Origin: Haliotis rubra
Taxonomy: Eukaryota
Assembly (NCBI RefSeq): GCF_003918875.1
Contig: NW_025765066.1
Location: 62,001-126,000 of the forward strand
Reading direction: 5' to 3'
DNA length: 64,000 bases
This document shows positions 39,777 through 54,100 of the stretch, piece by piece. A model generated the notes under the pieces. The model saw nothing but the letters and a program-made list of their open reading frames with translations, searched no databases and was not told the origin of the DNA. How positions within the stretch are numbered: the first letter of the stretch is position 1; each line of letters starts with the position of its first letter. A program made the position numbers and the translations under genes.

Positions 39777-41747
39777 CTGACATACAGCTAATCAAATCAA
39801 ATGTTCATTGTATGAAAGGCCATAGGCCCATATACATGAAGTGTTCATGGTACTATATAGGATCTATTAAACAAAAGATTCACATTTAATTTCTACTCTT
39901 GAATGCATATTTGAAATATAACATTACAGATTTTGAATCTTGATAGTTTGTAGTTGCCATAAGGCGAAGAAATTGTTGTACTGAAGGGCGATTTAAATAT
40001 TTAATTGGTATGTATTTCTTTCGAATTTTCTTTAAGGATCTTCAACGTTGTTTTAATTACAATGTGTACACACCCTTTAATGCTTTGCAGTTATATTATG
40101 TCTCCCGGTATCAATATTTAACCGTGTACATCCAACTCGAGCACGAGCAAAGTCGGTTGCAAATGTACTCAAGGTCAAATCTATTACATATTTCTCTGCT
40201 TCAAGATTAATCTTTAAACTTGCATAACATTCATATCTGGAGTTAGATGCTAATATATTTGTCCTTTCTTGGAAGTACATATCTTTTACTCTGGTTTGGA
40301 AACTGCTGAGAAAAATAGTTATACATCTAACGTCTTGCTAGACTGAAGCATAACCAAGACCTGAACTAAATAAGATATGTCTTGTAACATTACTTGCCCA
40401 TTTCGTACGCCTTACGTGGAAGTCGACCAGGTGGCATGTGAAGTAGTTTTAGCCAATATTTAATGCACCTCACTGGACTGTCTATAAACAATGGGTAACG
40501 ACCCAAGAGCCATCACTTTAGGAGTGTTAATGCCTGTACCAAGATAGTGTTTACATGCACGAAACTGGACCCTCTCTACCACCTTTAGTCCTTGATGTCC
40601 CCATATTTTGCTCCGTAAAGAAGGATGGGTGTAATTTTTTATTCCAATATTTTGAAACATGTTCTGAGTGGGACTTTTCCATATGTCCAAACTTATTTTA
40701 AAACATTCATAAGTGCCCTTTTCTCGTTTAACGGCAAACGGGATACTTCCTTGTTAAATTTAATGATGGAGTCATCAGTAGCCCAAGGTATTCTGAGACA
40801 ACTTCTACAATTTCATGGCGTTAATACCATTTTTCACATTGTTTAAGATTTCCACCCTAACGAAAAAAAAGGTTTTTGTTTTTGAAATGTTGAACAGTAG
40901 TCATCTTGAATATCCAGTTGCTCTTGTAGCCCACTAACTCTATCAGACATGAATATAACATCATTGGCAAACATCAGTAGAAACAGTTCATGTAAATCAG
41001 GATATAATTGTACTCCCCTATGACAAGTATAATGCATATCGGCAGCCACCTCATTAGTAAAAAGAGTAAATAGAATTGGGCTTAATATACAGCCCTGTTA
41101 TAGTCCAACAGGACAATGAAAACACTCGGTATAACCAGCGTTACACCGTACGCATGCTATTACAGACGAATACATAGACTGAATCACAGTCAACATTTTA
41201 ACTGGTAGACCACATTTTTGGAGGACATACATGAGTTTATTTCCATCTGTAGAGTGAAATGTTTTTCTGAAAGTCTACAAAGGCAACATAGAATCGACCT
41301 CTCCGTTTACTTAAATATTTCTGTATACAAGCTGTTAGTGTGAACAAGTTGTCCGTTATTGCGTATCCAGGCCTAAAGCCTGCTTGTTCTTCACATATCC
41401 TATTATTAATTTCTGCCCATTTTTTTAATCTGCGGTTAATTTTTGTTGAAAATATCTTTCTGAATATACTATTTACCCCTGTATTTATTAGGATCATCTC
41501 GAGGGCCATTTTTGTAGATAGGTACCATGGTACCTTTGCTCCGGGAGGAGGGAAATTCGCCTGTGGAATATATTCTTTTAAATAAAACTTCCAGGTGAGG
41601 GCATAGTTAGGTCAAATGATGATTTGAACATTTCCGGTAATAACATATCTAAACCCGATGATTTCCCACCCTTTACTAATTTTATACCATTCAGTATCTC
41701 TAATGTTTTTCAATCGTTTACTCCAGCTCATGATGAGTTTCTGTTTG

Positions 41748-42197
41748 TGTGAGGGAGTGACTTAATATTTAACGTCACATCGGTAATATCCCAGCCATAT
41801 CGTGACGAAAACAATTTATACAATAAAAGTGAAAATATTTTGAAGATTAAAACCTGTCGACGATGGACAGTAAAAATACTAGATAATCACAGATACAGTA
41901 TAAAACTAGTGAACAAAGCTCAAACATTCCAATTACAGAAGACAATTCAATATAAAACACAGGCTATAGATCGCTACGAACTGAAGGTAGATCACCAAAC
42001 TAGGAACCATGGGGACCATTACTTTTGCTACCTGCATGGAAACTAGCTGGATTTACACCATCCCTTCAGCCGCTGGCGACTGTAGGATAGTTTAGCCGAA
42101 ATTTAAAAGAACGAAACTACTACGTTTAACAACTTTGTACGAGAAAATCTTTCTTTGAAAGTTTTTGGACCTACGTACCCTCTCAGGAGGACAATAA
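41748..42197 (-). mobile_element. 5'-truncated retroposon (family 3; related pieces at ~28830-28885 and ~56466-56690)
   Basis: 10-bp TSD tttctgtttg; tail cgtcacgatatggctgggatattaccgatgtgacgttaaa followed by (cact)n. Confidence 0.7.
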
Positions 42198-42320
42198 TTT
42201 CTGTTTGATCGTGAGCATCATCAACACTAATTGAATGTAAAAACTCATCTTTGTTCAAAGATGGAACTTGAAACAGATCCTTAAAATATCCGTACCAAAT
42301 AGCTGTACTAATATCTATTT

Positions 42321-42488
42321 GGACTGACTGACAGTATGGTTTTACGCCGTTTTTAACAATATTCCAGCAATATCACGGCGGGGGACACCAGAAATGGGCT
42401 TCACAAATTGTACCCACGTGGGGAATCGAATCCGGGCCGTTGGCGTGACGAGCGAACACTTTAACCACTATGCTACCCCACCGCACCC
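42321..42488 (-). mobile_element. tRNA-derived SINE family 1
   Basis: Reverse-complement match to family 1. Confidence 0.88.
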
Positions 42489-43096
42489 TATTTATTTGAA
42501 AAGGTTTATTGTAACCCATGTTTTTAACGTGCTTCCAAAACGATTTACTGTTATGAAGCGATCCCTCTAGGATATTTAACAGTTCTTTTTTTAATGAAGT
42601 ACACTTACGTCAAGTGGTTGGCTTATATCTATTGTTAAGTAAGACTCGAGGTAAGAAAACACCGAGGCGAAGTTGCCAGGACATATACTTTTATTCCTCT
42701 CGCATGAGTGAATCTAGACACAACCACGCCGGCCGGCACATGGTTCTTCACTGCCCTCGCTTACACCCTTGCGCATGCGCATGCCTCTCACGCAAAGCTA
42801 CTTCCTTCCTCTCCAGTGCTCCAGCCACCCATACGTACACATACGTTAACACACTCCCAATATTCTATATTTGTTATGAAACTGGAATACATATATACAT
42901 ACACATTTATAAAAGTTCAACCAAATTATTGATATTTTTGTTTGTTGTTGTTGTCCTAAAGAAAAACATTAACAGTCCTGGCAATTATATAGTGACACAG
43001 AACAATATCAACAGTCCTGGCAATGATACAGTGATCAGATGCAATTCATCAGGAAAACTTCAGATGTTAACAAATGTCTGATTACTTCTTTTTCAG

Positions 43097-43783
43097 TCAC
43101 ATATATGACATGCTCCCAGATCGAAGACACTCAAGGAGCTGAGCGGCACTTGCTCCCTTCTTCGTCATACAGTCCGACAATTGTTGATTTGTATCCACCC
43201 AGTGAACATTGGATATCACATTCTGCTGCAACATTTGCTTGATGCTAGCGATGTCAACCCGTAAACGTTTCTCGTTTACAAGTTTTGTTGAATGTATGTT
43301 TTCAAACAGTGATTTGTTGTCTGTAAAACAGTCAATAGGGATCACGTTAGTGTTTCTCCTAAGCAGAACTTCGCTGAGAAGATGTCCAAGGTAGCAGGCA
43401 GTATCTAGCCCATCTACCATGGATAATGTCTCGGCTGCCAGCGTACTTCTCACTACCCTGTGTATCTTGTTGGCTTTCCAGGCAAGCGGAGAACTTTGAC
43501 ATCGTTCATCTGTCAGCAGAATGATAAATCCACAAGCACTTGAAACTCCATCATTCAGATTGGCATACGAGGCATCACAGAATAACTTGATTCTCAAATC
43601 TAAACTTTCAAACTTTGGAAAATAAAGAGGAAAGTTTTCATATTTTAATTTTCTTAATGCCTTATTAGCCCTGAGAATGTCCAAGACTCGAGGATGCTTC
43701 ATCGCTGTGCTTAGCTCAAGAACATCAAAACAGATATCAGGCCTAGTCTGGTTTCCTACCCAACTTAGCTGTCCGATCAAACT
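43097..43783 (-). CDS. Copia RT C-terminus plus RNase H segment
   Basis: SLIGQLSWVGNQTRPDI..FCDASYAN..STLAAET..TDNKSL..QLSDCMTK. Confidence 0.9.
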   Translation of the reverse strand, partial: SLIGQLSWVGNQTRPDICFDVLELSTAMKHPRVLDILRANKALRKLKYENFPLYFPKFESLDLRIKLFCDASYANLNDGVSSACGFIILLTDERCQSSPLAWKANKIHRVVRSTLAAETLSMVDGLDTACYLGHLLSEVLLRRNTNVIPIDCFTDNKSLFENIHSTKLVNEKRLRVDIASIKQMLQQNVISNVHWVDTNQQLSDCMTKKGASAAQLLECLRSGSMSYM

Positions 43784-46700
43784 TTGACAGATGAAACACA
43801 GGCCACAGCATATTATACACGGGGACGTGCATATGGACCGCGTCGTAACAGGAACGGTCGGCGTGGGAGGAGAGCTTATTATCCTCCACAGTTGGGTTTG
43901 TCTTCCCAAAATACTAGACAAAGGGGTAGAGGACATAGAATTCTTAATCCAATGGGAGACGATGGTCCTCAAAGGTGTGTGATATGTGAATCAATTTACC
44001 ATTTTGCAAGAGATTGTCCAGATTCCTATGAAAACATGAAGGCTAATGAAGAGGCTGTACTTTATACAGGGAACAAACAAACTGAAATGCAAGTATTGAT
44101 GTGTGAAGCCATGAATGCTGCAGTTTTGGATAGTGGCTGTACATCAACAGTTGCAGGTGAGATTTGGTTGGATGACTTTGTAAATAGTTTAGACAAGGAT
44201 CAACTCAAGAAAGTGATTGTTTGTGAAAGTGATACAATTTTCAAATTCGGCGGGGGAGAGAAATTGAAATCAATCAAGAAAGTTACCTTCCCATGTAAAA
44301 TCGCAGGACAGAACTGTTCGATAACAACTGATGTTGTGAGCAGTGACATTCCCCTTTTACTTGGAAAACCAGCCATGAAAGAGGCCCGTGTTGTACTGGA
44401 CCTTGAGAATGATAGGGCAAATATTTTAGGACAAGAAATAGAATTGCAGTGTACCTCTTCAGGACATTATTGTGTTTCGCTAACTGACAATACCACATCA
44501 GTAGCAGTGTCGGAGGTCTTCTTCAATGTATCAGAAAAGTCAGAACAAGAAAAGAAGAAGATTGTAACCAAGCTCCACAAACAGTTTGGACATCCATCAA
44601 GCCACAGATTAACACTTCTTTTACAAGATGCAGGCTGTTATGAAGAAAGCATGAATAATCTCGTGGAGGATGTAACTGCTACCTGTGATGTCTGCAAGAA
44701 ATTTAAGAAAACTCTTCCTAAACCTGTTGTTTCCTTGCCATTGGCGACTAGATTCAATGAAGTAGTTGCACTTGACCTGAAGGAGTGGAAAGCTGGGATA
44801 TACTTTCTACATATGGTGGATCTTGCTACTCGATTTAGTTTGGCAACAGTTATCTACAACAAATTGCCAGAGACAATTGTGAATAAAATCCTTGGTCTGT
44901 GGATTGGCAGTGGTTTTGGTGTTCCAGGAAAAATTTTGACGGACAATGGTGGTGAGTTTGCTAATGATATTGTGAGAGACATGGCGGAAAATCTAAACAT
45001 TCAAGTTTGTACAACAGCAGCTCAGAGCCCTTGGCAAAATGGAACTTGCGAAAGGAATCATGCCATCCTTGATGACTGTGTACAGAAGATGTTAGCTGAC
45101 AATCCAAGACTTGATCTCGAGACTGCAATTGTATGGGCCACCAATGCAAAGAACTCCCTTCAAATGGTTCATGGATACAGTCCCTACCAGCTCGTCTTTG
45201 GATGCAATCCCAATTTGCCATCAGTACTCATTGACCGCCCCCCTGCATTAGAAGGGAAAACTGTGAGTGAGATATTTGCCAAACATCTGAATTGTATACA
45301 CAGTAGTCGAAAAGCTTTTGTTGAGGCTGAATCATCAGAGAGAATAAGACGTGCTTTGAGACATCAAGTGAGGGCATCAGGTGTTCCCTTTCAACCAGGA
45401 GAAACTGTATATTATCAACGCAACGGAACATGGCGAGGACCTGGAAAGGTGATAGGACAAGACGGAAAAATAGTGTTTGTCAGACATGGCAGTGTGTACG
45501 TCAGAATCCATCCATGCAGACTTAACAGAGTGGGTGAAGAGTTTCTTAACCCTGAAGTGGAAAATACAAGTACCATTGAGGAAGGAAATGGATGTATAGA
45601 AACCATAGTAGAAAGACAAAATACAGAACAACTCTTTGAAGATGACAGTCAAGAAAACACATCACAAACAATTGATCACTCAAGGACAGTGTCTCAGTCT
45701 GCCTTACCGAAACCACATACGGAAATAAGATACCTACCTGTGGGTGGTGACATGTGGGTTTCTGCTACCGTGATCAGTAGAGGGGGCAAGGTGCATGGAA
45801 GTAACAAAGCTTGGTTTAATATCAAGGACAGTGATAGTGAAGAAATCAAATCACTTAATTTTGAGACAGGAGTAACATCATGGGAATTAGTTCAAGCTTC
45901 ACCACAGGATAACAGTGACTTAGTCGAAGAAAAGACTGGTGATAATCATGTTTTTCTTGCCTCTTCTAATAGCATTGATGATGCTAAACAAGCAGAATTA
46001 GACAACTGGAAAAACTTTAATGTCTATGAGGAGGTTACTGACCATGGACAGCCTCAAATGTCTACCAGATGGGTGTTGACTGAAAAACAACAGGATGGAA
46101 AGCTGATAAATAAAGCCAGGCTAGTTGTTCGCGGTTTCGAAGAAATGGCAGATATACAAAGTGATTCACCGACTGCAGGTAAAGATACTCTTAAAATTCT
46201 GTTGTCTCTGTCATCAGCTTTTGGATGGGAATTAAACACCATAGATATTAAGGCAGCATTCTTACAAGGACATAACATAGATCGTGATGTATACCTCAAG
46301 CCACCTGTTGAAGCTGATACTGATGGAAAATTATGGAAACTAAGGAAATGTGTGTATGGTCTCAATGATGCATCAAGAAAATGGTATTTCAGTGTTAGGG
46401 AAGAGTTGTTGAAAGCAGGATGTTTGCAATCTACAATAGACCCATCTCTATTTTACTGGTATCGTGACAAGTTAGAAGGTCTTTTCCTGATGCATGTAGA
46501 TGATTTCATTTGGTCCGGAGCACTCCCATTTGAAAGAATTGTCATTGATAAGATTAGATCTTCGTTCAAGATTGGAAAGGAGGGGAGAATGATGTTTAAA
46601 TACATTGGAATGGAAATCAAACAGACGAAAGGAATTATCCTTGATCAGTGGTTCTATATCAGCGGAATACAGTCGATACCTTTATCAACAAGTCGTTCGG

Positions 46701-46801
46701 CACAAAAAGATGATGATCTCAACAAAGAAGAAGTAGGTCATCTGAGAAGTTTGATCGGACAGCTAAGTTGGGTAGGAAACCAGACTAGGCATGATATCTG
46801 T
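43784..46801 (+). CDS. Copia zinc knuckle-protease-integrase-RT segment, inverted relative to the rest of the element
   Basis: CVICESIYHFARDC, LDSGC, HKQFGH..CDVC, TDNGGEF..CERNH, DIKAAFLQ and MHVDD in one uninterrupted frame. Confidence 0.93.
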
Positions 46802-47416
46802 CAAATACACTGGTTCCACTTTAATGGTGGGACAAGAAAAATTTGTGTTTGGCATTGACTGCTTCCCAAAGAATTTTCTTAAAGATAATGACATCTGTTT
46901 GAAGAGAGTTGATGCTTCATTGTAATCAACACCTGTGAGAACCAACTGTCGATCTTTGTGTTCTAACCCTGACCCGTCAAGCAGACGGAAAGCTAGCACT
47001 GATTCTGGAAGTATCATATTAAACTTCTTAGTTTTGTTATAAAGTTTTTCAAATTCTGAAACATACGTTTCCATACTCATATTTTGTGTTCTTTTAAATT
47101 TATCAAAGTCACCATATACCTCATACGCTGCCGTGATTTCATCCTTCTTGTAGATTCCATCCATAAACGCAAGAAGTAATTTCGCCCCATCCTTGTCACC
47201 AAGTTTCGCCGCTCCCAGTTCATTAAACACTTTGTCCCGAATGTTATCTGTTTCTGGCAGTGAAAGAGCTATTGCCGCACCCTGTTTATCTTCTGCCAAA
47301 TCTGTGACTGCTTGCCACACCTTCACTTCTTCCACCCATCGACTGTAAGGCTTGTCGTCGAGAAACGCTGGGGGAATTCTGTAATTTTCAGGCGCCATTT
47401 TCTTTTCGGTAGACAC
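46763..47416 (-). CDS. gag: Copia gag N-terminal part
   Basis: ORF just after the PBS: PPAF..YSRWVEEVKVW..QGAAIALSL..LAFRLLDGSGL. Confidence 0.85.
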   Translation of the reverse strand: MSTEKKMAPENYRIPPAFLDDKPYSRWVEEVKVWQAVTDLAEDKQGAAIALSLPETDNIRDKVFNELGAAKLGDKDGAKLLLAFMDGIYKKDEITAAYEVYGDFDKFKRTQNMSMETYVSEFEKLYNKTKKFNMILPESVLAFRLLDGSGLEHKDRQLVLTGVDYNEASTLFKQMSLSLRKFFGKQSMPNTNFSCPTIKVEPVYLTDIMPSLVSYPT

Positions 47417-47489
47417 TTCGCTTCGCTAATTCTTCGCTTCGCTATTTCACTGTAGTTGCCCTGTCACTGGCCTGGGAACTATTAACCAC

Positions 47490-47501
47490 GCTCTGCTACC
47501 A
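47490..47501 (-). promoter_or_regulatory. Primer-binding site complementary to the 3' end of tRNA-Met
   Basis: TGGTAGCAGAGC directly after the 5' LTR. Confidence 0.85.
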
Positions 47502-48593
47502 TGTTAAGTAAGACTCGTGGTAAGAAAACACCGAGGCGAAGTTGCCAGGACATATACTTTTATTCCTCTCGCATGAGTGAATCTAGACACAACCACGCCG
47601 GCCGGCACATGGTTCTTCACTGCCCTCGCTTACACCCTTGCGCATGCGCATGCCTCTCACGCAAAGCTACTTCCTTCCTCTCCAGTGCTCCAGCCACCCA
47701 TACGTACACATACGTTAACATCTATTACGAAGCTGCCTCAATGACACTTGACCCTTACAGCTCCTGTACCGTCTAAGTGCTCGCCCGGCCTCTAGCTTAC
47801 TATAGTGATATTCTGCATCATACCATTTGCCTGTGAAGAGTCTCTTAATTGTCCTAGCATTTCGCTTAAATATAGAGGCAGTATGTAGCAAGGCACGTGA
47901 AACTATAGCAACAGAAGTATCAATACTGCTATATAACAAGTCAGTGGCACGGCTCAGCTCTTGCTTACAACAATCCGTTAGCTATCTATTACAGAATGTA
48001 TATTCCCCAACGTTACTATCATCACCACAGCGAGCATTTATAATATGGATATCTGATGAAATACATAAGCCAATGTGGGTTTGATCAAATCTTTTTTACA
48101 ACAGTATCTTTTGAGCTACATGGAAGATCGAAAGGATCTTCATTTTCACCAGCAACGTCATCACGCGAGTAATCAGACACCTTACCAGTTCGCACATTTA
48201 AGTCTCTTCCTATTACAATACAAGGATTGTTCTACAGTTTGGCAATAAATCTAGAATAATAGTTCCTAGAAGATTTATGCCATTTCTGTCTGGTTGTTTG
48301 TCATAAAATGTCGAAAACTGGGGAGGTATATATACACACGCGTACAATATATCGGCATTTAAGTAGGATAATGATTTATCAAGCTTTAAACATACACCTA
48401 GAGCGCATGTATACAGTTGGGTAATAAGATGACTTATTGTTTTCCTCACTAACACTGTCACAGCACCCGAACTACGCCCAACATGACTAAATCTTGACGC
48501 TTGGACTTGATGAATGTCAAAGGCGGGGAAACACCCCGAACAGTCTAAATCCTGAGCCCATGTTTCTACAAATCCAACTAAATCATAGTCAGA

Positions 48594-48697
48594 CTGACTG
48601 ACTGACTGGGCTTCACACATTGCAAACATGTGGGGATTCGAACCCGGGTTTCGGCGTGACGAGCCAACGCTTTAACCACTTGGCTACCCCACCGCCC
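48594..48697 (-). mobile_element. Short family 1 SINE (tRNA head joined directly to (cagt)n)
   Basis: 16-bp TSD ctaaatcatagtcaga; inserted in the LINE endonuclease region. Confidence 0.85.
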
Positions 48698-49567
48698 CTA
48701 AATCATAGTCAGAGATGTAGGCTATGAAGTCTGTTTCATCAAGTTTCGAACTGAGTCCTTCAAAGATCCACAACAGGAAGGAGATATCACTTTTCGAGCC
48801 TCGGCTTAACCATAATTCTTCCTGACGCGTGTTACTGGGAGCCAGGTTTACACCTTAGATGGTGACAGGCGTTTATCTTGGGAGGGGCGGGGGTGACGTG
48901 TGTGTGTGTGGGGAACCTTTTCACAAAATGGAATGTTTCCCTTGTTTAAGTACCTACGTTCATGATCGGCTTGAAGTCCCCGATGAACAGCTCTTTGTCT
49001 CCGGGTGAGATCGCTGGACACACCAATACCAACCTTTTCATAGTCCTTGTGGTGGTTCAACACGTTTAGTTTGTAGTGCTCGTGGGCGAATCGTACTAAA
49101 AAAGGTCTTCGTCGATCTCTTGATCTTTGGCCTAGCCTAAATGTTCTCTCCAAATCCAGAGGTAGCCACTCAAGGTGTCCCTGGAGTTGATTTAGAGTAT
49201 CCATAAACGTCTCGCCGTCGTTTTCAGGAACTCCATAAAATATGACGTTGCTTTTTCGTGTGAAGGTGATATTTCTATTTCGATTTGTGTCATCTTGCTT
49301 TCTACTGCCTCGTTAATACGACACTCCAGATCGCCAATATTAGAATGAACAGTATCAATGTCTAATTGTAGTACATGTTGATTTTTCCTTCAGGCTGTTC
49401 AGCTCAGTTCCATTGGAGACAACAGATGCTTTGAGGTTGTTGGTATCTGCTCAGATTAATTTGATATCTTCTTTCACCTCTCTCATATCCCAACTGAATA
49501 CTGTTTTCATATCCTTTCACTCTCTGAGAATCTTGGCCATGTCAGGTCCTAGACGATCTAGTGCAGC

Positions 49568-49606
49568 TGGTCCAGGATTTACTTCAACGTCTCCAGACAT
49601 TAGTAA
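49568..49606 (-). other. 2A-like (StopGo) peptide motif LLMSGDVEVNPG|P at the start of LINE ORF1
   Basis: Codon-by-codon translation matches the D(V/I)ExNPGP consensus. Confidence 0.75.
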
Positions 49607-50392
49607 ATGGGAGTGTGTGTCAACAATGTAGATCACCAGGACAGACGTTAATTGTCCGTGTTGCGGCGGTGTTGTGTATGTATATATCTGCATTTTACAT
49701 ATTTGTATATACTTAATCTGGTAATGAAAAAATGTATTAAGTTTTACTGTAAAGTAAATATTATTATATCAGCTTTAATATTATTTAACTGCCTTTGGGT
49801 AGCTGTGGGTTAAGGTTGCATGGGTTACTCTTTTGTTAAAGACAGGTAAGTTATGCATTTTGTATGTTTTTACAATTATGTTATTGTATATAGTGCTTAA
49901 TCACTATTGTATGTATGTATGTTCTGTCGACCGAGGGACATATAAAACCCCATATGCAATGAATCATAATGCTACAACAAATTTATCTTACCGAAAGTTT
50001 AAATCTCTCATCATGGAAATACAACATTAAAACAAACTGAAAGTCAATTATATATTTTACTGACATGGTACTAACTAGTCGATCCGAACCACAGGTTCAC
50101 GGTTTACTGACTGCCGTGGATGCATGCTTTTTCCATGGGGCGGGGTATAAATGATTTATTCTCCCTCGCAAAGATTTATACCCAGCTTGGGCGGTAAACG
50201 GCATACCTGCTAATTTGTTCAATTTGAGATCAAGGTTCTTACATGAGGTAGGATAAACGGGATTGCCAACTGAAGGGATGTTTTTCAAACAGTTTCTTGG
50301 TGAGTTTCAGTGTTTGTCCCTAACCAACTGGTTTTAAAACAGTACCAAAAGTGCAACATAGTATCGAATGAACACTGTGACTACATCATGAC

Positions 50393-50455
50393 TACTTTCT
50401 AGTGAACTTGACGCTTTGGCTTTATAACAGAGTCTCCAAGAACGCTGCATATCTG
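50393..50455 (-). pseudogene. Predicted 63-nt exon of module B (ADMQRSWRLCYKAKASSSLES)
   Basis: Same length and frame as 36995-37057; donor gtcatg is weak. Confidence 0.5.
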
Positions 50456-50760
50456 CTTTAAAGTCTTGCTATTGACAACAACTCATGCTGTTGACAAGAA
50501 CGGCACTGAAAATATTTGAAATAAATCATTGACAACTAAATAATTTCTTTATTTTTAGATACATATAGTTACGAAGGAGTTTTTAAAAAAAAATTAAAAA
50601 TTACTTTAAGTGTTTGGGAGTAGGGAGTTTTGGGAAGAGAGGTCAGATTGGGATTCAGTGGTCGTGGTCGTGTAAAATTGCTGTGTTCAGCATTAAACAA
50701 CAAACATCAAATAAAACTTCATATATCAAGGATCAATTTGTAAGTGAGTTCTGCTCTTGC

Positions 50761-50787
50761 CTCTTATCAGCGGTTCTCCTACTCCAT
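50761..50787 (-). pseudogene. Predicted 27-nt exon of module B (DGVGEPLIR)
   Basis: Same acceptor ttatgtcttctcag; donor is gcaaga (GC) instead of gtaaga. Confidence 0.5.
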
Positions 50788-51184
50788 CTGAGAAGACATA
50801 ATATAAGATGGCATATGGCTCTGAATGATTTGTTTTCTTTTTGGGTGAGAGGTACATATTACATGAAGCATTGAGAAGCACAACGACCTAAGTCACTTTT
50901 TGTAGGTTTTCGGGAGAGACGAAAAACTGGTACCTTGAAAACTATTGGGAAAAAGTTTTCTTTATTAGACTTGCGTGGTGACATACAAAGCATCATGCTC
51001 TACTTTGATGCTGTTTCATTAATAAACATTTTCAGAATTATGGAGGCAAAACTAATTATTGATTCTTTTACATGAGAGATCTCCCTTGGGGTACATATAA
51101 GCATAAGAATCTCCATTCTAATCCCTGCGACTGTTGTAACTATATTTTGAACAAAATATTTAAAAAACAAAAACAACGTTTTTG

Positions 51185-54100
51185 TCTGCAGGAGGAACTG
51201 GTACCTCGTTTGAGAAGCAGTTGACAGACGTCCATTCACATCTTGCACGTGACATTATTCACTGTGCTAGCATGATGATGGGCTCTGTCATTGGCCTGCG
51301 CAGTTTGTGGCTGTCGGGGGCGTGCTATTCACCAGCCACTCAGCAGGCACTATTTTCTCTGCCTTATACTATAGGTGCAAAACCCTCTCCGGAACAGGTA
51401 AAAGCCACTTCAAATCCCTGTGTCCTGTCCACACTCAGGGATGGCCATATGCCACAGTGGAAACGAGGTCCGCCACCATTCACTGAGGTGCATCACATTC
51501 CTGTTCCCACCTCCCAGGAAAACACACGCAATCTCCGTGCCGAGGTCCAGTCTCTACTGGACAAGGCAGCCATCGAGGTGGTTCCAGAAGGTCCCCAAAA
51601 CGAGGGATTTTACTCCACGTATTTCATAGTGACCAAGAAGGACGGATAGTCCAGACCCATACTCAATCTAAAAGGGCTGAACAAAATGATAGAAGTGCCA
51701 TCTTTCAGGATGGAGACACTGTGCTCAGTGATTTCCAGCGTTGAGACAGGGGATTGGCTCACGTCAATCGATCTCAAAGAAGCTTACCTACATACATGTA
51801 CCAATGCATCCTGACTTCCAGAAGTACTTCTGGTTCTCCTTCGATGGGAAGTGCTACCAGTTTCGTGTGCTCCCCTTTGGCATCTCCACGGCACCAAGGG
51901 TGTTCACCAAACTCATGTTAGCTCAGTTAGCAAGGTCAGAGGGCAGGTTTTGTCACCCGTACCTCGGCGACTGGCTGCTCCGGGCGGTAGGCCAGAAGTT
52001 GAGCAGGAATAGCACACATCATGTGATAAAAATTCTCATACGGCTGGGATGGATTATCAATCTCAAGAAATCAGAACTCATTCCATCAAAGGATCTGGTT
52101 TTCTTGGGAGCGAGATTCAATACAGTGACGGTGATTGTTTCACTGTCCCAGGACAGAGAACTTTTTAAAAGCTTCTTGGGACTCCCACGGCTTAGGCTTC
52201 AGCTCGGCAACATGGCGGCGACCGTGGATGTGGTGTGGCGTGCGCGTCTGAGGGTGAGACCTATACAGCAGGCACAGACTCAACTGTGGTCTCCATCCCC
52301 AAAACCTCCCCCCCCCCCCCACACACTTACGGTGGTGGATGGACGCCGGGACCTTATCAAGGGATGTTCCTCTGGAGTCCCTTACGCCCACCCTCTCGAT
52401 TCAGACAGACGCCACCCTCTCAGGTTGTGTGTGTGTGTGTGTGTGAGGGGTGTGTGTGTGTTTCTGGGCGTCAGGTCAGTCTCGGTTGGAGCATGAGATC
52501 AGTCTGCAAATCAATGTGCTAGAATTGAGAGCAGTCCGACAGGTGTTCGATAACATTGTGGATCAGGTTCGTGGCCAAGTGGGTTCTTCTAGAGATGGAC
52601 AATCAGAAGGCCATGACCTATATCCTGAGGCAAGGCGGCACGGTATCAGTGTCCCTGCTACAGGAGGCGTGACAGTTTCTGCTATGGTGCAAAAGGACAA
52701 CATACGTGTGATGCCAGTTTATCTCCCTGGGGAGAGACAATGTTCGCGCACTTGCGCTCTCCCGTCGTATATTAGCTCCACACGAGTGAATGCTAGATAT
52801 CTGGGATTATCTCCCAGTTGTACAGGTCGTTCCAGGTGGATCTGATTGCCTCTGGGGAGACGAACCAGATACCAGTGTTTGCTCTTGGATACCGGATTCG
52901 AGAGCGATAGCCAACGGTGCCTTACAACTGGATTGAATGGACAGGGTACTGTGGGCGTTCCCACCAATACTACTGATATCCAAGGTCATATCGCAGTTGG
53001 CCACTCAACCATCTCGACTGTTAGTGCTCCTTGCACCTCTTTGGTCAGCTAAAAGATGGTTTCCGGTAATTCTCAGGTTCCTGTACTATTACCCTTTCTG
53101 ACATACCTTCTATCCCAGAAAGGGGCGCTACACCCAAATCGCAGGTCCAGAATGGCCTCCATGCAAGCAGAATTCCTGCATCAGTTGCAAACACAATTCT
53201 GGCTTCGTGGAGGGATTCGACAAACGTAAGAATGGCCTGTTGCACGCGCTGCTGTGTTGGCAGGGGAATTTTAGGTTCCCCTTTCTGCAGATCTAGTCAT
53301 GATGTTTGAGTTCCTCCAGTCTCATTTCGAAGCGGGGCTAGCCGCATCAACTGTTTGAGGTTACTCAACGGCTATTTCAGCGTTTCATATACCTGTCGAT
53401 GGTGTACTCTTGGGGCAGCACCCTCTTTTACAGCATTTATTAGTATGCCCAGAAAGAATCCGTCTGGTGTACGGTGGATCAGTCCTCCGTGTCAATCGTT
53501 CTTGATTGGCTGTCCGGTCCTCTCTTTTACGATCTGTCAGCTCTTACCCTCCAGCTGTTAACGTGGAAGGCGGCTGTCCTTGTGGCAGTAACCTCTGGCA
53601 GGCGAGTAGGTGACATTCATGCATTGTCGGCTGACCCCCAGCTAACTGTTTCCCATAAAGACAGAGTTAGCATTAGGTTGCCGGATACTTACCGTCCTAA
53701 GAGAGATAGCGCCTTTCATGTCATGGTGCCTATTGAGCTTCCAGCTTTCAGTCAGCCTTCCCCACCAGGTACCTCTCTTCGGCACCAGGTGCTCACGTCT
53801 TAGATATGTCTAAGACCCTCAAGGCTTATGTCAAGAGGATATTGGCTATCCGGAGAGATAACCAATTGTTTTGTTGTTACGGTGGGGGGTAAGGCTGGTC
53901 TTCCGGCGAACAAGCAGACCATATCTAGGTGGCTTGTCTCTGCCATTTGTACGAGCTATACACAGAAAGGGTTAACACAACCTACTGGGTTAAAAGCTCA
54001 TTCGCTTAGAACAGTAGCCACATCTAAGGCTTATGCTGCGTCTCTGCCTATTGAGGAGATCTGCTCCGAGCTATCTGGAGCCGGCCGAGTATGTTCATCT

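What the first reader, a model, noticed from the sequence alone, without database searches (positions are those of the whole stretch)
43730..46801. Young Copia element with an inverted pol core between 55-bp inverted repeats; flipping it yields gag-UAG-pol in frame
Seen: the LTRs, TSD, PBS, gag and RNase H read on the minus strand, but zinc knuckle-PR-IN-RT is one unbroken ORF on the plus strand. The inverted block is bounded by 43730-43784 and 46747-46801, which are reverse complements at 54 of 55 positions and encode SLIGQLSWVGNQTR(P/H)DI. The junctions use microhomology (acagat), and the gag codons LTD appear at both ends. Reading the product of recombination between the repeats, RT-RH is restored exactly, and gag reads ..VYLTD-IMPSLVSYPT-UAG-LSDQT-LTDETQA.., a 57-nt in-frame insert with a single UAG followed by C. 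Established: GalEa elements normally have one gag-pol ORF, and UAG-C is a comparatively leaky context. Inference: the simplest explanation is a one-off template-switch inversion. The geometry would nevertheless allow a reversible off/readthrough switch, and a transcript of the present form would be antisense to pol of sister copies. The in-frame outcome has a 1-in-3 chance of being coincidence.
Basis: partly seen in the sequence, partly recalled or inferred. Interest (0 to 1): 0.85.

Follow-up and report, generated by a model that had tools for sequence, protein, structure and literature searches.

The report
One-off inverted Copia retrotransposon copy
A recently inserted Copia-type retrotransposon has had its central 3 kb flipped by a single copying accident that left a 55-bp inverted duplication as a scar, so it is a broken copy and not a genetic switch.

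Summary
A 5,088-bp Copia element lies on the minus strand at 42633-47720. Its LTRs match at 218 of 219 positions, the target-site duplication is TCTAT, and the primer-binding site is the GalEa-type TGGTAGCAGAGC. Its zinc knuckle-PR-IN-RT block is one open 1,024-codon frame on the plus strand, bounded by 55-nt arms that are reverse complements at 54 of 55.

The arms are a scar, not a feature of the family. The genome's other copies are three full-length and one cut off by a contig end. All are collinear and show neither inverted junction. The three full-length ones carry the 55 nt once and read VYLTDETQ with no stop. Junction 1 has a 6-nt microhomology (ACAGAT). Junction 2 has 2 nt inside a 9-of-11 near-match. 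This fits two microhomology-guided template switches, most likely during reverse transcription.

A homologous contig (C931) has an empty site, so the insertion is very young and possibly heterozygous. The in-frame 57-nt/UAG reading holds arithmetically. However, the stop is not conserved, no RNA structure follows it, no recombinase is present, and no second orientation was seen.

The public data were short-read contigs that keep only majority variants. The inversion therefore rests on the assembly alone. Interest is low.

The parts
42628..42632 (.). Target-site duplication, left copy (TCTAT)
   Evidence: The homologous contig C931 has a single TCTAT at the empty site.
42633..42851 (-). 3' LTR, 219 nt, TGTTA...TAACA
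   Evidence: It matches the 5' LTR at 218/219.
42852..42860 (-). Putative short polypurine tract (GGGAG) abutting the 3' LTR
   Evidence: Read. Position-based inference only.
43097..43729 (-). RNase H part of pol, sense on the minus strand, open to its stop
   Evidence: Homologues at 62-64% identity cover this part only. It is collinear with the sister copies.
43730..43784 (-). Left arm: the original RT/RNase H boundary (..NQTRPDI), identical to the three full-length sister copies
43736..43792 (+). The 57 nt that read I-R-P-S-L-V-S-Y-P-T-stop-L-S-D-Q-T-L-T-D on the plus strand, in the pol frame
   Evidence: No structure follows the TAG.
43785..46746 (+). Inverted block: zinc knuckle, protease, integrase and reverse transcriptase, one open frame on the plus strand
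   Evidence: It is 98.7% identical to sisters L019 and L020, in which it is collinear with gag and RNase H.
46747..46801 (+). Right arm: the duplicated copy of the RT/RNase H boundary at the end of the inverted block. It carries the private C-to-A change at 46791 (P to H in the TRPDI motif).
46796..46801 (.). Junction 1: 6-nt microhomology ATCTGT/ACAGAT, shared by the gag-pol boundary and the RT/RNase H boundary
43783..43786 (.). Junction 2: 2-nt microhomology (TT/AA) inside a 9-of-11 near-match between the gag-pol boundary and the RT flank
46802..47416 (-). gag without its zinc knuckle. It runs on into the antisense arm and stops after 10 foreign codons.
   Evidence: It is 99.3% identical to L019.
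47490..47501 (-). Primer-binding site TGGTAGCAGAGC
   Evidence: PMC3587641 gives the same 12 nt for GalEa1 and CoRex1.
47502..47720 (-). 5' LTR
47721..47725 (.). Target-site duplication, right copy (TCTAT)

Best explanation
This is one very young copy of a low-copy, GalEa-like Ty1/Copia family, and it was born with or soon acquired a single internal rearrangement.

A growing DNA strand left its template at the gag-pol boundary (..TTGACAGAT). It re-annealed through the 6-nt ACAGAT/ATCTGT match to a strand of opposite polarity at the RT/RNase H boundary. It then copied about 3 kb backwards to the gag-pol boundary. There it switched back through a 9-of-11 near-match (TCATCTGTCAA against TCATCTGAGAA), landing 55 nt upstream of where it had first landed.

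The result is an inverted zinc knuckle-PR-IN-RT block. The 55-nt RT/RNase H boundary is now present twice in inverted orientation, and TTGACAGAT is present at both ends. The arms are therefore the scar of the event, not its cause.

I think the switches most likely happened during reverse transcription in the particle, at roughly 55-60% of the weight given to this explanation. Later chromosomal replication or repair is the less likely setting.

The copy cannot make a gag-pol polyprotein, so it is non-autonomous. Its LTR-driven transcript would carry truncated gag, about 3 kb of antisense pol, and then RNase H.

Shown: the anatomy, the junction sequences, the collinear sisters and the empty site. 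Inferred: the order and stage of the switches, and any transcript.
For: 1. The 55 nt is single-copy in all three full-length sister copies (L019, L020, L021). Their gag-pol boundary reads TATTTG-ACAGAT-GAAACA with no insert. The truncated fourth copy is also collinear at that boundary.
2. Searching the genome with both junctions returns only this locus in the inverted form.
3. Nothing is lost at either breakpoint, and only duplications occur. There is 6-nt microhomology at junction 1, which has about a 1-in-4,096 chance for a fixed register. Junction 2 has a 2-nt microhomology inside a 9/11 near-match.
4. The LTRs match at 218/219 and the TSD is intact. Contig C931 is collinear at 89-97% identity and has an empty site with a single TCTAT. 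The insertion is therefore very recent, which leaves little time for a separate chromosomal inversion.
5. Two of the 23 private substitutions lie within 16 nt of junction 1 (46791, 46817). This is a weak hint of error-prone synthesis at the switch.
6. Template switching during reverse transcription is already invoked for complex LTR-retrotransposon structures (PMC1950507).
Against: No read-level confirmation was possible. The four runs laid were Logan short-read contigs. They show only the collinear joints 43784<->46746 and 43793<->46796. At all 19 tested positions where they differ from the window they carry a sister copy's letter, 16 of them private to this copy. They therefore represent the majority copies and neither confirm nor refute the inverted junctions.

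The stage of the event (particle, chromosome, or a rearranged donor) is not settled by any result. An inversion needs a template of opposite polarity, which is a rarer kind of switch for reverse transcriptase than same-polarity copy choice.
Confidence: 0.78

Rival explanations
1. The same one-off rearrangement happened after integration. It arose either by fork-stalling/template-switching (microhomology-mediated break-induced replication type) or by repair of two staggered breaks, which is known to leave inverted duplications at inversion breakpoints.
For: The junction anatomy (inverted duplication plus microhomology) is the same as that described for chromosomal template-switch inversions. 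The arms differ at 1/55 and the LTRs at 1/219, which is compatible with any timing.
Against: The insertion is very young and absent from the homologous contig C931. The chance that a specific 5-kb stretch suffers an independent 3-kb chromosomal inversion in that time is small compared with the error rate of reverse transcription (established knowledge, not measured here). Plain staggered-break repair does not predict the 6-nt ACAGAT coincidence.
Confidence: 0.25
2. Assembly artefact: the locus really holds a collinear element, and the inversion was introduced by a chimeric long read or by merging of assemblies.
For: No public contig bridging either inverted junction was shown. The assembly matches, by size and contig count, a roughly 30x Nanopore hybrid meta-assembly merged from two assemblers (PMC6774278; the identification is an inference). 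A haplotype-specific copy would have had only about half that long-read depth.
Against: Assemblers join on long overlaps, not on 2-6 nt of microhomology. An artefact would need two precise breaks 3 kb apart inside one element. It would also have to create a 55-nt duplication that no sister copy has and then return to the correct strand, LTR and matching TSD. Against the short-read contigs the copy differs almost entirely by substitutions, mostly transitions, and shows few indels, so the region is well polished. Several of its private letters recur in a run from another study (X8 at 42901, 42932 and 46817).
Confidence: 0.1
3. Reversible switch: recombination between the 55-bp arms flips the block on and off, and the 'on' form expresses pol by readthrough of the UAG in the 57-nt insert.
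For: The geometry allows it. The arms are 54/55 identical. All three coding pieces fall in one frame after mirroring (arithmetic). The stretch has a single TAG followed by C.
Against: The arms exist in this copy only. The family has no stop at the gag-pol boundary. There is no structure after the UAG (z = -0.15). No recombinase other than the element's integrase is present. A 55-bp homology gives very inefficient spontaneous recombination in animal cells (established knowledge). In-frame has a 1-in-3 chance. No joint of the flipped form carrying this copy's private letters was seen (weak data).
Confidence: 0.02
4. An add-on to the best explanation, not exclusive of it: the rearranged copy acts as a silencer. 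Its LTR-driven RNA carries 3 kb of antisense pol and a 55-bp long-range stem, and it feeds small-RNA silencing of the sister copies. This would resemble maize Mu killer.
For: Geometry only. A possible RNA run (X8) holds contigs carrying this copy's private letters at 42811-42974 and 46800-46984. However, the run type is a guess and contigs give no strand.
Against: No strand-specific or small-RNA data are available. X8 has no contigs over 43857-45240. The family is tiny and its sisters are already broken, so there is little left to silence.
Confidence: 0.05

Closest known systems
GalEa clade of Ty1/Copia retrotransposons (GalEa1, CoRex1, Zeco1)
   Same: The element is 5.1 kb with 219-bp LTRs beginning TGT and ending CA, with TGTTA termini. 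It has a 5-bp TSD and the PBS TGGTAGCAGAGC, identical to GalEa1 and CoRex1. It has the TRPDI motif in RNase H and the domain order PR-IN-RT-RH. The host is apparently marine.
   Different: This copy has its core inverted. The protease motif is DSGC and the RNase H end motif is SDCMTK instead of ADxxTK. Placement in a tree with reference GalEa sequences was not done.
5'-inverted L1 copies (twin priming)
   Same: This is a retroelement copy carrying an inversion made by the copying machinery, with microhomology and small duplications at the junction. The 5'-inverted class is described in PMC2912911. The twin-priming mechanism is from my own knowledge.
   Different: L1 is a non-LTR element copied at the target site, and its inversion always includes the 5' end. 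Here the inversion is an internal block with both flanks, both LTRs and the TSD normal.
Chromosomal inversions with inverted duplications at the breakpoints (staggered breaks; FoSTeS/MMBIR)
   Same: There is an inverted duplication of breakpoint sequence, microhomology at the joins and no loss of sequence.
   Different: Those are host-replication or repair events, usually at kilobase to megabase scale. Here the event is confined to one newly made 5-kb retroelement, and reverse transcription is the more likely setting. Comparison from my own knowledge.
Complex LTR retrotransposons made by template switching (PMC1950507)
   Same: Aberrant element structures are attributed to strand switches during reverse transcription rather than to later recombination.
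   Different: Those cases are same-polarity switches giving elements that share LTRs, not an internal inversion.
Mu killer of maize
   Same: It is a rearranged transposon copy whose transcript contains antisense or inverted element sequence.
   Different: Mu killer is shown to make hairpin RNA and small RNAs that silence MuDR. Nothing of the kind is shown here. Comparison from my own knowledge.
Invertible DNA switches (Hin, Fim, phage Mu G segment, yeast 2-micron FLP)
   Same: A segment is bounded by inverted repeats.
   Different: Those have conserved repeats, a dedicated site-specific recombinase and both orientations in a population. None of the three is found here.

Membership tests
Ty1/Copia superfamily | pol domain order protease - integrase - reverse transcriptase - RNase H | tested here: met
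   Integrase_H2C2 (253-308) and rve (324-415) lie upstream of RVT_2 (755-961) on the block's own strand. The DSGC protease motif and the CX2CX4HX4C knuckle lie upstream of them. The RNase H piece continues RT collinearly in the sister copies.
GalEa clade | LTRs of about 138-311 bp bordered by TGT...CA (PMC5445492) | tested here: met
   The LTRs are 219 bp, TGTTA...TAACA.
GalEa clade | 5-bp target-site duplication (PMC5445492) | tested here: met
   TCTAT is on both sides, and a single TCTAT is at the empty site in C931.
GalEa clade | PBS TGGTAGCAGAGC as in GalEa1 and CoRex1 (PMC3587641) | tested here: met
   The identical 12 nt lies at 47490-47501 on the minus strand.
GalEa clade | One large gag-pol ORF (PMC5445492) | tested here: inconclusive
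   The sisters read through the gag-pol boundary without a stop but are broken elsewhere into 3 or more ORFs. In this copy the three pieces share a frame only after mirroring (arithmetic). CoRex1 is described with two ORFs.
GalEa clade | Conserved motifs: TRPDI in RNase H and ADxxTK at its end | tested here: inconclusive
   TRPDI is present in the left arm and in the sisters, and is TRHDI in the right arm. The end motif reads SDCMTK.
GalEa clade | Groups with reference GalEa RT/RNase H sequences in a tree | not tested
The nearest named hits are generic 'Pol polyprotein' entries from marine arthropods and mussels at 45-46% identity.
Invertible DNA switch | Inverted repeats conserved among family members | tested here: not met
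   The 55 nt is single-copy in all three full-length sister copies, and no other locus has either junction.
Invertible DNA switch | A dedicated recombinase encoded in or beside the segment | tested here: not met
   Only retroelement integrase and RT domains were found on the ORFs of the element.
Invertible DNA switch | Both orientations present in a population of molecules | tested here: inconclusive
   The collinear joints seen in four runs carry sister-copy letters. Short-read contigs drop minor variants, so neither orientation of this particular copy could be followed.
Programmed gag-pol stop-codon readthrough (MuLV type) | A conserved in-frame stop at the gag-pol boundary, followed by a stimulatory RNA structure | tested here: not met
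   The sisters have no stop at the boundary. The 95 nt after the TAG fold no better than shuffles (z = -0.15).

The most novel reading that the evidence does not exclude
The rearranged copy is transcribed from its own LTR. Through its 3 kb of antisense pol and the 55-bp long-range stem formed by the arms, it seeds small-RNA (piRNA or siRNA) silencing of its own family. That would make it a natural animal counterpart of maize Mu killer, born in a single reverse-transcription accident.
Probability: 0.05. Interest if true: 0.6.

Novelty: new member of a known kind. Interest (0 to 1): 0.2.

Why it matters
The importance is modest. It is a clean, base-resolved natural example of a double, microhomology-guided strand switch inside a metazoan Copia element, with the ancestral state preserved in sister copies and an empty site available for comparison. 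That is useful for cataloguing how LTR elements are born defective. It is also a warning for annotation, because ORF-based pipelines would call this one element as two or three elements on opposite strands. It does not open a new mechanism. The switch and readthrough ideas that made it look exciting are not supported.

Tried and rejected
1. Read support. Only Logan short-read contigs were on offer. They show only the collinear joints. At all 19 tested positions where they differ from the window they carry a sister copy's letter, 16 of them private to this copy.

2. Independent occurrences of the junction-spanning ORFs. A homology search with the 291-aa ORF found nothing above 64% identity, and nothing covering its antisense-derived N-terminus. 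Exact look-ups of the ATG-started gag (211 aa) and pol (968 aa) products found no record. The collection may leave this genome out, so this is uninformative.

3. Readthrough signal. The RNA fold after the TAG gives z = -0.15, so this was rejected.

4. Selection on the lineage. The 21 coding private substitutions split into 8 synonymous and 13 non-synonymous, which is close to neutral and uninformative.

5. Nested insertion of a second, opposite-strand copy followed by two deletions. I rejected this because the block is exactly the part missing from the host copy, with no LTR remnant.

6. tRNA origin of the flanking high-copy repeat. ARAGORN finds no tRNA.

7. Earlier notes of the scan. Nothing relevant was found.
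Full report
**What is there**

A 5,088-bp LTR retrotransposon lies on the minus strand at 42633-47720.
- The two 219-nt LTRs (TGTTA...TAACA) differ at one position, 42649/47518.
- The element is flanked by a 5-bp duplication, TCTAT.
- The primer-binding site TGGTAGCAGAGC follows the 5' LTR directly.
- On the minus strand, gag is open over 46763-47416 and the RNase H part of pol is open in the ORF 43097-43972.
- Between them, the zinc knuckle (CX2CX4HX4C), protease (DSGC), integrase and reverse transcriptase form one open 1,024-codon frame on the plus strand, at 43784-46858.
- Pfam finds Integrase_H2C2, rve and RVT_2 in that order on this frame.

The block is bounded by 55-nt arms at 43730-43784 and 46747-46801. 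They are reverse complements at 54 of 55 positions, with the mismatch at 43740/46791. Complementarity stops exactly at the arm ends. No other inverted repeat in 11 kb exceeds 25 nt at 82%.

**The in-frame claim**

I did not build the flipped sequence.

The existing plus strand, read in the pol frame from 43730, gives TDIRPSLVSYPT*LSDQTLTDETQAT. The existing minus strand gives ..VEPVYLTDIMPSLVSYPT*LSDQT.. at the end of gag. Mirroring coordinates about the arms (p to 90531-p) puts the pol codon starts at positions congruent to 1 mod 3. That is the same class as gag (47416) and RNase H (43972).

In-frame has a 1-in-3 chance, and one stop in 19 random codons is about what chance gives.

**The family**

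The genome (1.378 Gb, 2,855 contigs) holds only three other full-length copies and one cut off by a contig end:
- C2374 (L019);
- C2704 (L020);
- C2682 (L021);
- C815 (L022), truncated.

They are 95-99% identical to this copy, piece by piece. All are collinear. In the three full-length copies gag runs straight into the zinc knuckle as TATTTG-ACAGAT-GAAACA (VYLTDETQ), with no insert and no stop. The 55 nt occurs once, at the RT/RNase H boundary, always with CCT (..TRPDI). The truncated copy is also collinear at the gag-pol boundary. Searching the genome with either junction returns only this locus in the inverted form.

The arms are therefore not a family feature. They were created by the event that inverted the block.

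**The junctions**

I describe them in element sense.

At junction 1, gag ends ..TATTTG-ACAGAT and continues with the reverse complement of the RT/RNase H boundary. That reverse complement itself begins ACAGAT, so the six bases could come from either parent.

At junction 2, the inverted block ends ..TCATCTGTCAA and is followed by AGTTTG... of the arm. The normal sequence upstream of the arm is TCATCTGAGAA. The 3' end of the inverted block therefore matches the re-entry site at 9 of 11 positions, including the last two.

No base is lost. Only the 55 nt and TTGACAGAT are duplicated, and both in inverted orientation. This is the signature of two microhomology-guided template switches:
1. A growing strand leaves at the gag-pol boundary and lands on a strand of opposite polarity 3 kb away.
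2. It copies back to where it left and then re-enters 55 nt upstream of its first landing site.

Blunt repair of staggered breaks could give the duplications. It would not predict the ACAGAT coincidence.

**When it happened**

The copy is very young, with LTRs matching at 218/219.

Contig C931 (104.6 kb) is collinear with this contig over at least 20 kb at 89-97% identity. It has an empty site with a single TCTAT exactly where the element sits. C931 is either a residual haplotig, in which case the animal is heterozygous for the insertion, or a recent duplicate.

Either way little time has passed since insertion. Reverse transcription is far more error-prone than chromosomal replication. I therefore favour a birth defect made in the particle. 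A post-integration event, or an unseen rearranged donor, remains possible. The arms differing at 1/55 is compatible with all three timings.

Two of the 23 private substitutions lie within 16 nt of junction 1 (46791 and 46817). This is a weak hint of sloppy synthesis at the switch.

**Is the assembly right?**

I could not confirm this with reads. All runs on offer were Logan short-read contigs. Laid on 42300-47480, four runs from three studies show two opposite-strand joints, 43784<->46746 and 43793<->46796. These are the collinear RT-RNase H and gag-knuckle junctions.

At all 19 tested positions where those contigs differ from the window they carry a sister copy's letter, and 16 of those positions are private to this copy. 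So they are the majority path through four or five near-identical copies. Contigs of this kind drop minor branches. This neither confirms nor refutes the inversion.

Protein-level look-ups for the junction-spanning ORFs found nothing.

Several points argue against an artefact:
- It would need two precise breaks at 2-6 nt of homology.
- It would need a new 55-nt duplication that no sister has.
- It would then need to return to the correct strand, LTR and TSD.
- Against the short-read contigs the copy differs almost entirely by substitutions, mostly transitions, and shows few indels.
- A run from another study (X8) carries the window's private letters at 42901, 42932 and 46817.

The genome's size and contig count match the published blacklip abalone assembly A6 (1,378,265,264 bp in 2,854 scaffolds). 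That assembly was a roughly 30x Nanopore hybrid meta-assembly in which some haplotigs remain (PMC6774278). This identification is an inference. I put the risk of an artefact at about 10%.

**The switch and readthrough idea**

Nothing supports it:
- The arms are unique to this copy.
- The family has no stop at the gag-pol boundary.
- The 95 nt after the TAG fold no better than shuffled sequence (z = -0.15).
- Only the element's own integrase and RT are encoded.
- A 55-bp homology is a poor substrate for spontaneous recombination in animals (established knowledge).

**What it is like**

The LTR size and ends, the 5-bp TSD, the PBS identical to GalEa1 and CoRex1, and the TRPDI motif all fit the published description of GalEa-like Copia elements (PMC3587641, PMC5445492). 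GalEa is one of the two dominant Copia clades in molluscs (PMC6238403). I did not place it in a tree, so clade membership is likely but unproven.

The rearrangement works like the 5' inversions of L1 copies (PMC2912911). It also resembles chromosomal template-switch inversions with inverted breakpoint duplications. Template switching has been invoked for other aberrant LTR elements (PMC1950507).

**Consequences**

The copy cannot make a gag-pol polyprotein. A transcript from its 5' LTR would encode a gag lacking the zinc knuckle. It would then carry about 3 kb of antisense pol and could pair its two arms into a 55-bp stem. That could in principle feed small-RNA silencing of the family, as Mu killer does in maize. 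I have no strand-specific or small-RNA data, and the sister copies are already broken. I give this about 5%.

**Verdict**

The exciting one, a reversible readthrough switch, is not. This is an ordinary kind of event seen in unusually clean form, and the interest is low.

Noticed in passing
G000 contig C931:97801-104629 (L030, L024, L036), against window 40167-51388: A second contig is collinear with this region at 89-97% identity. It has an empty site with a single TCTAT at C931:100186-100190, where the element sits here. It is probably a residual haplotig, which would make the insertion heterozygous in the sequenced animal, or else a recent duplication.
   Followed up: partly
L020:4022-4687 (C2704 sister copy); the unit corresponds to window 46033-46074: One sister copy carries a 39-nt unit repeated 17.1 times at 99% identity inside the RT region, which is in frame at 13 codons per unit. 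The k-mer depth spike in run X1 at 45933-46105 probably reflects this array.
   Followed up: partly
window 43785-46801: Of 17 substitutions private to this copy inside the inverted block, 10 are C-to-T on the plus strand against 2 G-to-A (p about 0.006, post hoc). Only 3 of the 10 are at CpG. The flanks and the sister copies do not show the bias. It could be a trace of cytosine deamination on one strand, or chance.
   Followed up: partly
window 44503-44607: A contig in run X1 skips these 105 nt (joint 44502 to 44608). None of the assembled copies has this deletion, so the reads hold at least one further family member that is not in the assembly.
   Followed up: no
window 42330-42490 and 48607-48698: This is a very high-copy short repeat, with summed k-mer depth in the millions in all DNA runs. 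It occurs on both sides of the element at 78-83% identity. It looks like a SINE, but ARAGORN finds no tRNA in it.
   Followed up: partly
window 41747-42200: A repeat of about 455 nt has at least 40 copies at about 90% identity across the genome. I did not identify the family.
   Followed up: no
window 41237-41509 (minus strand): A short ORF has a weak RVT_1 match (E = 5e-4, below the Pfam cut-off). It is probably a fragment of a non-LTR retrotransposon. The region around the Copia element is a patchwork of repeats.
   Followed up: partly
L019, L020, L021: All three full-length collinear sister copies have interrupted reading frames. L019 has three ORFs of 369, 532 and 547 aa. L020 and L021 have more breaks. 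Their LTR pairs are more diverged than those of this copy.
   Followed up: partly
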